Shown piece by piece: positions 693 through 61,488 of a stretch of 64,000 nucleotides of DNA. Source of the stretch: Podarcis filfolensis (taxonomy: Eukaryota); the NCBI GenBank assembly GCA_964270895.1, contig OZ185438.1; one strand, written 5' to 3'. A program made the position numbers and the translations under genes. Positions within the stretch are counted from its first letter, which is position 1; each line of letters opens with the position of its first letter. Below the pieces are notes generated by a model. That model was not told the origin of the DNA. It saw nothing but the letters and a program-made list of their open reading frames with translations, and did no database searches.

Positions 693-61488
<60,796 letters not shown>

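What the first reader, a model, noticed from the sequence alone, without database searches (positions are those of the whole stretch)
11759..11786. Hidden internal start encoding an N-myristoylation motif: predicted membrane-anchored mini-CIN85 ([15 protein letters not shown]...)
Seen: minus strand tttACC-ATG-GGT-AAT-TCT-TCT-TCA-CTT-GAT-GAT-G|gtaagg, a strong Kozak context and a consensus donor in exactly the phase (1) needed to join exon 14. Established: M-G-x-x-x-S is the N-myristoyltransferase consensus, exon 14 carries the CARMIL-type CPI motif that binds actin capping protein, and the C-terminal coiled coil mediates CIN85/CD2AP oligomerisation. Inference: an isoform of about 200 aa (198 aa within the window) with no SH3 or proline-rich domains could tether capping-protein regulation and full-length CIN85 oligomers to membranes. 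Short internal-promoter Ruk isoforms exist in rodents, so novelty must be checked. I do not recall this N-terminus.
Basis: partly seen in the sequence, partly recalled or inferred. Interest (0 to 1): 0.75.

Follow-up and report, generated by a model that had tools for sequence, protein, structure and literature searches.

The report
Conserved frameshifting cassette exon in CIN85
The "hidden start codon" sits inside a real 92-base optional exon of the adaptor gene SH3KBP1/CIN85, kept from lizards to birds; bird RNA splices it in as an internal exon that breaks the main reading frame, so a lipid-anchored mini-protein is possible but not shown.

Summary
The sequence is exactly as described. On the minus strand, ACC-ATG(11786)-GGT...G(11759)|gtaagg joins the CPI-motif exon (6080-5971) in phase and gives 198 codons in the window.

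It is not a free-standing first exon. It is the 3' part of a 92-nt exon (11850-11759) with a strong, conserved acceptor. Three bird RNA contigs from three runs read exon 13 | 92-nt exon | exon 14, spliced exactly at the homologous sites.

- **Conservation:** lizard versus bird identity is 82-85%, as high as the constitutive exons. Against a second squamate it is 97%, with flanks at 59-76%.
- **Effect of inclusion:** after exon 13 the main frame shifts and stops in exon 14 (6059-6057). This is a poison or truncating cassette.
- **The MGN frame:** the ATG is kept in all copies I could read. Gly2 is Ser or Ala in 3 of 8 birds, and Ser6 is lost in one. Substitutions show no codon-position bias, and three upstream AUGs precede it in the bird transcript form.
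- **Lacertid RNA:** contigs showed exon 14 spliced but no use of the cassette.
- **Mammals:** not settled.

Another note of this scan (s1-325502) had already seen the 92-nt exon.

Verdict: a real conserved alternative exon. The myristoylated mini-CIN85 remains a minority possibility.

The parts
11759..11850 (-). 92-nt alternative cassette exon in intron 13 of SH3KBP1/CIN85
   Evidence: Spliced between exon 13 and exon 14 in bird RNA contigs L001-L003. It is 92 nt in all six nucleotide copies. Identity is 96.7% to squamate contig L004 against 59-76% in the flanks, and 82-85% to birds.
11759..11786 (-).
   Evidence: The ATG is kept in all six nucleotide copies and four further open frames.
11851..11890 (-). 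Polypyrimidine tract and cag acceptor of the cassette
   Evidence: Conserved in L004 and in the Cariama genome L005. The homologous site is used as the acceptor in bird RNA.
11733..11758 (-). GTAAGGC donor and conserved downstream intronic stretch
14342..14427 (-). Exon 13 (86 nt, ..[14 protein letters not shown]), same phases as the cassette
5971..6080 (-). Exon 14, the CPI (capping-protein interaction) motif exon
   Evidence: Carried as a spliced block in lacertid RNA contigs X14 record 9 and X9 record 17. It corresponds to the human CIN85 L463-S499 CPI peptide.
6057..6059 (-). TAA stop reached by the exon-13 frame when the cassette is included
   Evidence: Translation of exon 13 + cassette + exon 14.
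4467..4592 (-). Exon 15 ([17 protein letters not shown]...)
2391..2656 (-). Exon 16 (Ser-rich linker and start of the coiled coil)
693..756 (-). Exon 17 (coiled coil, [21 protein letters not shown])

Best explanation
When it is spliced in after exon 13 (shown in bird RNA; inferred for the lizard from conserved splice sites), it shifts the main reading frame by two bases. Translation then runs through a short hydrophobic tail and stops 24 nt into exon 14. The main product loses the CPI motif and the coiled coil, and the mRNA carries a premature stop upstream of four exon junctions. Most likely the exon is therefore a regulated unproductive or truncating splice switch (a 'poison exon' type) for CIN85. 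The MGN... frame would then be a by-product of nucleotide-level conservation. It could be translated only from short transcripts or by leaky scanning.
For: **Splicing shown.** L001, L002 and L003, from three SRA runs, each read exon 13 | cassette | exon 14 with junctions exactly homologous to 11850 and 11759. **Genomic position conserved.** In the Cariama genome the cassette lies in intron 13 with a polyY-cag acceptor and a GTAAGGC donor. **Exon-shaped conservation.** Identity is 96.7% in the exon against 59-76% in the flanks versus a second squamate. Bird-lizard identity of 82-85% equals that of constitutive exons 14-15. In the whole intron only this block and one other align between bird and lizard. 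**Length.** It is 92 nt in six of six nucleotide copies, so inclusion always shifts the frame. The resulting stop lies in exon 14. **No peptide-level constraint.** Variable sites fall 9/7/7, 7/7/9 and 7/9/7 over codon positions in the three frames. In the MGN part there is about one synonymous change to seven non-synonymous. **The exon is alternative.** Skipping is the form in annotated isoforms and in the lacertid RNA contigs.
Against: No RNA from the window's own lineage shows inclusion; only an unspliced contig covers the exon. NMD sensitivity was not tested. The ATG and frame a stay open in all ten or so copies, which a pure poison exon does not need. However, the exon is pyrimidine-rich and frame b is open in 5 of 6 as well. 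Inclusion contigs were assembled as long paths in three bird runs, so the isoform may be fairly abundant and stable rather than degraded. Two automatic gene models (gecko P0014, finch P0088) read the exon as coding.
Confidence: 0.6

Rival explanations
1. One reading: the MGN AUG starts a ~211-aa mini-CIN85 (CPI motif plus coiled coil, no SH3 or proline-rich part) that is N-myristoylated and membrane-tethered. It would be made from transcripts that begin at or near the cassette, or from short transcripts that include it.
For: The ATG is kept in every copy seen. Gly2 and Ser6 are present in all four squamate copies (window, L004, P0119, and implied in gecko P0014) and in 5 of 8 birds. The context is ACCATGG in the window and GCCATGG in birds. 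The frame joins exon 14 correctly and is the longest open frame of the three bird contigs. MGN-x-x-S fits the PROSITE NMT pattern (established knowledge). Internal-promoter CIN85/Ruk isoforms exist in mammals (Buchman 2002, as cited in PMC3135365).
Against: All three bird contigs continue upstream into exon 13. The acceptor is conserved while the upstream sequence is not, and a TATTTAAA about 100 nt upstream in the window is absent from L004. Gly2 is Ser in L002 and Ala in P0088 and P0121, and position 6 is Leu in P0120. The -3 base is T in L004. Residues 7-9 differ freely and there is no excess of synonymous change. In the exon 13 + cassette context there are three upstream AUGs, including an overlapping 37-codon frame. 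No 11759-to-6080 junction appeared in the lacertid RNA contigs.
Confidence: 0.12
2. Mutually exclusive exon (scan note s1-325502): the cassette replaces exon 13, with which it shares both phases. This would give a full-length CIN85 carrying a 30-residue alternative linker (DAFLFLSTH...MGNSSSLDD) before the CPI motif.
For: Exon 13 is 86 nt and the cassette 92 nt, and both are 1 + 3n + 1. Frame a is open across the whole exon in all copies.
Against: Every RNA contig that contains the cassette also contains exon 13 directly upstream. The peptide in frame a shows no codon-position signature of selection.
Confidence: 0.08
3. Truncating switch with a functional product: inclusion makes a stable CIN85 that keeps the SH3 domains and the proline-rich region but ends in a hydrophobic tail. 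It would lack capping-protein binding and oligomerisation.
For: The stop lies in exon 14 right after the cassette. Inclusion contigs are assembled over 1.7 kb in three bird runs, which suggests appreciable steady-state levels.
Against: The frame-b tail is poorly conserved between lizard and birds (17 of 30 residues) and is cut short by a stop in L002. The premature stop lies upstream of four junctions, so NMD is expected (established rule, not tested).
Confidence: 0.15

Closest known systems
Conserved frameshifting 'poison' cassette exons coupled to nonsense-mediated decay (as in SR-protein and other regulator genes)
   Same: An optional internal exon whose length is not a multiple of three. 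It introduces a premature stop well upstream of the last exon junction, and its conservation is at nucleotide level, as high as neighbouring coding exons, without codon-position bias.
   Different: NMD coupling and autoregulation are untested here. CIN85 is an adaptor, not a splicing factor. So far the exon is seen only in squamates and birds. It also holds a conserved ATG in the frame of the downstream exons.
Short Ruk/CIN85 isoforms from internal promoters (Ruk-t, Ruk-h; Buchman et al. 2002, cited in PMC3135365)
   Same: They would give C-terminal CIN85 products lacking SH3 domains, and the gene is known for many promoter and splice isoforms.
   Different: Those isoforms arise from their own first exons. 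Here the exon is shown as an internal cassette after exon 13, and no start site is shown. I could not read the 2002 paper to compare N-termini. The mouse model X14 (P0039) uses a different first exon joined to exon 13.
N-myristoylated MGN-start proteins (recoverin, Arf family, calcineurin B; from established knowledge)
   Same: The window has M-G-N-x-x-S at the start of the open frame.
   Different: Gly2 is not kept in 3 of 8 bird copies. The AUG is not the first in the observed transcript form, and no protein evidence exists.

Membership tests
Alternative cassette exon | Both splice sites used in RNA, joined to the flanking constitutive exons | tested here: met
   Met in birds: L001-L003 read exon 13 | 92 nt | exon 14. 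Not shown in lacertid RNA.
Alternative cassette exon | A skipping isoform also exists | tested here: met
   Annotated isoforms join ..SNDI directly to DLEGFD. Lacertid contigs carry exon 14 with no piece on the cassette.
Alternative cassette exon | Conservation peaks on the exon and its splice signals | tested here: met
Poison exon (AS-NMD) | Inclusion gives a premature stop more than 50 nt upstream of the last exon junction | tested here: met
   The stop is at 6059-6057 in exon 14, and exons 15-18 follow.
Poison exon (AS-NMD) | The inclusion isoform is stabilised when NMD is blocked | not testable with these tools
   Needs UPF1 depletion or cycloheximide RNA-seq.
Alternative first exon / internal promoter isoform | Transcripts begin at the exon and no upstream exon is joined | tested here: not met
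   All three bird contigs carry exon 13 upstream. There are no 5'-end data for the lizard.
Alternative first exon / internal promoter isoform | Conserved promoter-like sequence upstream | tested here: not met
   Conservation stops about 30-40 nt upstream of the acceptor in the bird comparison, and falls to 65-76% versus L004.
N-myristoyltransferase substrate | Gly at position 2 | tested here: inconclusive
   Present in the window and the other squamates. It is Ser or Ala in L002, P0088 and P0121.
N-myristoyltransferase substrate | Small or hydroxyl residue at position 6, no Pro at 7 | tested here: met
   The window has Ser6 and Leu7. Position 6 is lost in P0120, which has Leu.
N-myristoyltransferase substrate | Translation starts at this Met and myristate is attached | not testable with these tools
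   Needs ribosome profiling, mass spectrometry or alkyne-myristate labelling.
CPI-motif protein (downstream exon 14) | L-x-H-x-T-x-x-R-P-K-(6x)-P | tested here: met
   Exon 14 reads [17 protein letters not shown] and corresponds to the human CIN85 CPI peptide.

The most novel reading that the evidence does not exclude
The cassette is a two-way switch. Its inclusion ends the SH3-scaffold reading frame and at the same time places a conserved, good-context AUG in the frame of the CPI motif and coiled coil. Short transcripts, or leaky scanning, would then yield a myristoylated, membrane-tethered capping-protein regulator. This would hold at least in squamates, where Gly2 and Ser6 are intact in every copy seen.
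Probability: 0.1. Interest if true: 0.7.

Novelty: new member of a known kind. Interest (0 to 1): 0.35.

Why it matters
CIN85 links receptor endocytosis, B-cell signalling and actin capping, and its many isoforms are only partly catalogued. An optional exon kept for roughly 280 million years, which removes exactly the capping-protein-binding and oligomerisation modules or sends the mRNA to decay, would be a conserved way to tune CIN85 dose or function in sauropsids. It also corrects how automatic gene models treat this exon: two of them force it into the coding frame. If the minority reading holds, it would add a lipid-anchored CPI-motif protein to the known regulators of capping protein.

Tried and rejected
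- **RNA test in the window's lineage.** Three contig sets and one single-cell raw-read run gave no cassette junction. The single-cell run had no reads on either exon, so it says nothing. Contigs drop rare forms, so this is weak negative evidence.
- **Mammals.** Mouse X14 and the Tupaia model are not on record. The Heterocephalus gene range is too long. The Fukomys hit is an intronless copy spanning only 1.5 kb. In Neotoma, the 10 kb upstream of exon 14 held no homolog by nhmmer (best E 1.6), but exon 13 is not within that span. Intron 13 was therefore only partly searched and mammals stay open.
- **Profile search of the frame-a peptide against 1.84 billion representatives.** It gave four hits. 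I could not identify their species, but by sequence they resemble the bird and squamate copies. A 30-residue profile has little power for diverged copies.
- **Mammal-like short open frames P0045 and P0087.** These look like alternative N-termini but read like the polypyrimidine end of the intron before exon 14, so I take them for unspliced contigs.
- **The extra 9-residue exon in the gecko model P0014.** It has no counterpart in the window and is probably a frame-fixing artefact or gecko-specific.
- **Paper searches.** Searches for an SH3KBP1 poison or cassette exon and for Ruk-t/Ruk-h N-termini found nothing relevant.

Full report
**Observation.** The minus strand at 11790-11753 reads tttACC ATG GGT AAT TCT TCT TCA CTT GAT GAT G|gtaagg. 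The acceptor of the next known exon is ...ttttaag|ATCTGGAAGG at 6080. The single G left by the donor completes GAT (Asp), and the frame continues DLEGFDSV...[17 protein letters not shown], the CPI motif.

I mapped the remaining exons at 4592-4467, 2656-2391 and 756-693. The last coding exon lies beyond the window. The C-terminal part is 99% identical to SH3KBP1 of Lacerta agilis and Podarcis muralis, so the window comes from a lacertid lizard.

A scan for the same configuration found only this site in 64 kb on both strands. The configuration was ATG-GG, an NMT-type pattern, an open frame and a phase-1 GTRAG donor. Shuffles gave 0.28 per strand.

Sixty-four bases upstream of the ATG there is a long polypyrimidine tract ending in cag| at 11851/11850. 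The segment 11850-11759 is thus a 92-nt unit with both splice signals. Another note of this scan (s1-325502) had seen this.

**Evidence from elsewhere.**
- A word search seeded on exon 17 returned a 213-aa Logan open frame, P0011, beginning MGNFSSCHQ-DLEGFD. Its cluster holds two more, MGNSSSFHE and MSNSSSFHE.
- Their contigs (L001, L002, L003, from three different runs) are spliced bird SH3KBP1 mRNAs.
- Upstream of the ATG all three continue through the rest of the 92-nt unit and then directly into the end of exon 13 (..AGCAATGACATCG).
- On the window they map as exon 13 (14427-14342), cassette (11851-11761), then exons 14, 15, 16 and 17.
- In birds the unit is therefore an internal cassette exon, spliced at exactly the sites homologous to 11850 and 11759.
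- L002 starts 29 nt before the junction, as expected for a branch of a k=31 assembly graph. This suggests that skipping and inclusion coexist in that sample (my inference).

**Conservation.**
- Bird-lizard identity is 82-85% on the cassette, against 81-82% for exons 14-15 and 73-76% for exon 16.
- A genomic-type contig of another squamate (L004) is 96.7% identical over the exon but 59-76% in the flanks.
- In the Cariama cristata genome (L005) the unit lies in intron 13 with a polyY-cag acceptor and a GTAAGGC donor.
- Across the whole intron only this unit aligns between bird and lizard, together with about 25 nt on each side, plus one other block.
- Nothing promoter-like is conserved upstream.

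**Consequences of inclusion.** Exon 13 is 86 nt and ends with one base of a codon. Adding 92 nt shifts the frame. The product reads ..ERSNDI-VMPFF...LHLMM-IWKVLIP and stops at 6059-6057 in exon 14. The CPI motif and the coiled coil are lost. The stop also lies upstream of four exon junctions, which by the usual rule marks an NMD substrate (not tested).

All six nucleotide copies are exactly 92 nt.

**Is the MGN peptide selected?**
- The ATG is kept in all copies, including the four open frames found by the profile search.
- Gly2 is Ser in L002 and Ala in the Chloebia model P0088 and in P0121. Position 6 is Leu in P0120.
- The -3 base is A in the window, T in L004 and G in birds.
- Variable sites are spread evenly over codon positions in all three frames. 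In the MGN part I count about one synonymous change to seven non-synonymous.
- In the exon 13 + cassette context three AUGs precede the MGN AUG. One opens a 37-codon frame that overlaps it.
- Taken together, this looks like constraint on the RNA rather than on the peptide.

**RNA from the window's own lineage.** In one search, contigs of three runs of related lizards carry exon 14 as a block inside long spliced contigs (X14 record 9, X9 record 17).

The cassette is covered only by an unspliced 243-nt contig in X1, at intron-background depth. The small depth in X14 and X9 fits short overlaps on the poly-T tract, going by the depths at 11879.

No 11759-to-6080 joint is among the 15 listed; 99 weaker ones were not shown. 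The single-cell raw-read run had no reads on either exon. Use of the exon in lacertids is therefore inferred from conserved splice sites, not shown.

**Gene models.** A gecko UniProt model (P0014) reads the cassette in the exon-13 frame and adds a 9-residue exon that restores the frame. The window has no counterpart to that extra exon. A Gouldian finch model (P0088) reads it in frame, apparently with a shorter exon. The exon has thus been picked up by pipelines. I found no paper on it.

**Mammals.** Not settled.

**Verdict.** The sequence observation is right and the donor is real. The unit is a deeply conserved, frameshifting cassette exon of CIN85, most likely an unproductive or truncating splice switch. 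A myristoylated mini-CIN85 is not excluded, especially in squamates where the motif is intact. However, the internal position of the exon, the upstream AUGs and the loss of Gly2 in several birds all argue against it.

The CPI motif lies in exon 14, multiple promoter and splice isoforms of CIN85 are known, and the coiled coil is the oligomerisation module (established knowledge).

Noticed in passing
window 13677-13774 (minus), intron 13: A second block conserved between the lizard and the Cariama genome: 75% over about 100 nt in the BLAST block and 80% mean column identity over about 170 nt when the surrounding stretch is aligned. It lies about 570 nt downstream of exon 13, with no obvious open frame or splice pair. 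It may be a regulatory element; a TATAA-like string in the lizard is not kept in the bird.
   Followed up: partly
window 8750-9150, 11350-11550, 6750-7350, 10750-11350: These stretches show very high summed depth in all four runs, with many variant letters and loose ends. They are interspersed repeats inside intron 13, not part of the gene's transcript.
   Followed up: no
window 609-1505 (minus): A 299-codon stretch without stops runs through intron 16 into exon 17. Its middle part is Pro/Ser/Gly-rich. Only the last 21 codons before the donor are SH3KBP1 coding sequence.
   Followed up: no
window 11600-11655 and about 11290-11350 (minus): Long (ATT)n and (CTT/CTG-like)n microsatellites lie just downstream of the cassette.
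   Followed up: no
P0001 (Gekko kuhli), P0065 (Naja naja): Public models with probable errors: the Gekko model reads through the exon 17 donor into the intron, and the Naja model repeats the whole C-terminal half twice.
   Followed up: no
L006 (Fukomys damarensis): A 370-aa SH3KBP1 model is encoded in only 1.5 kb, presumably without introns. It is probably a processed retrocopy.
   Followed up: no
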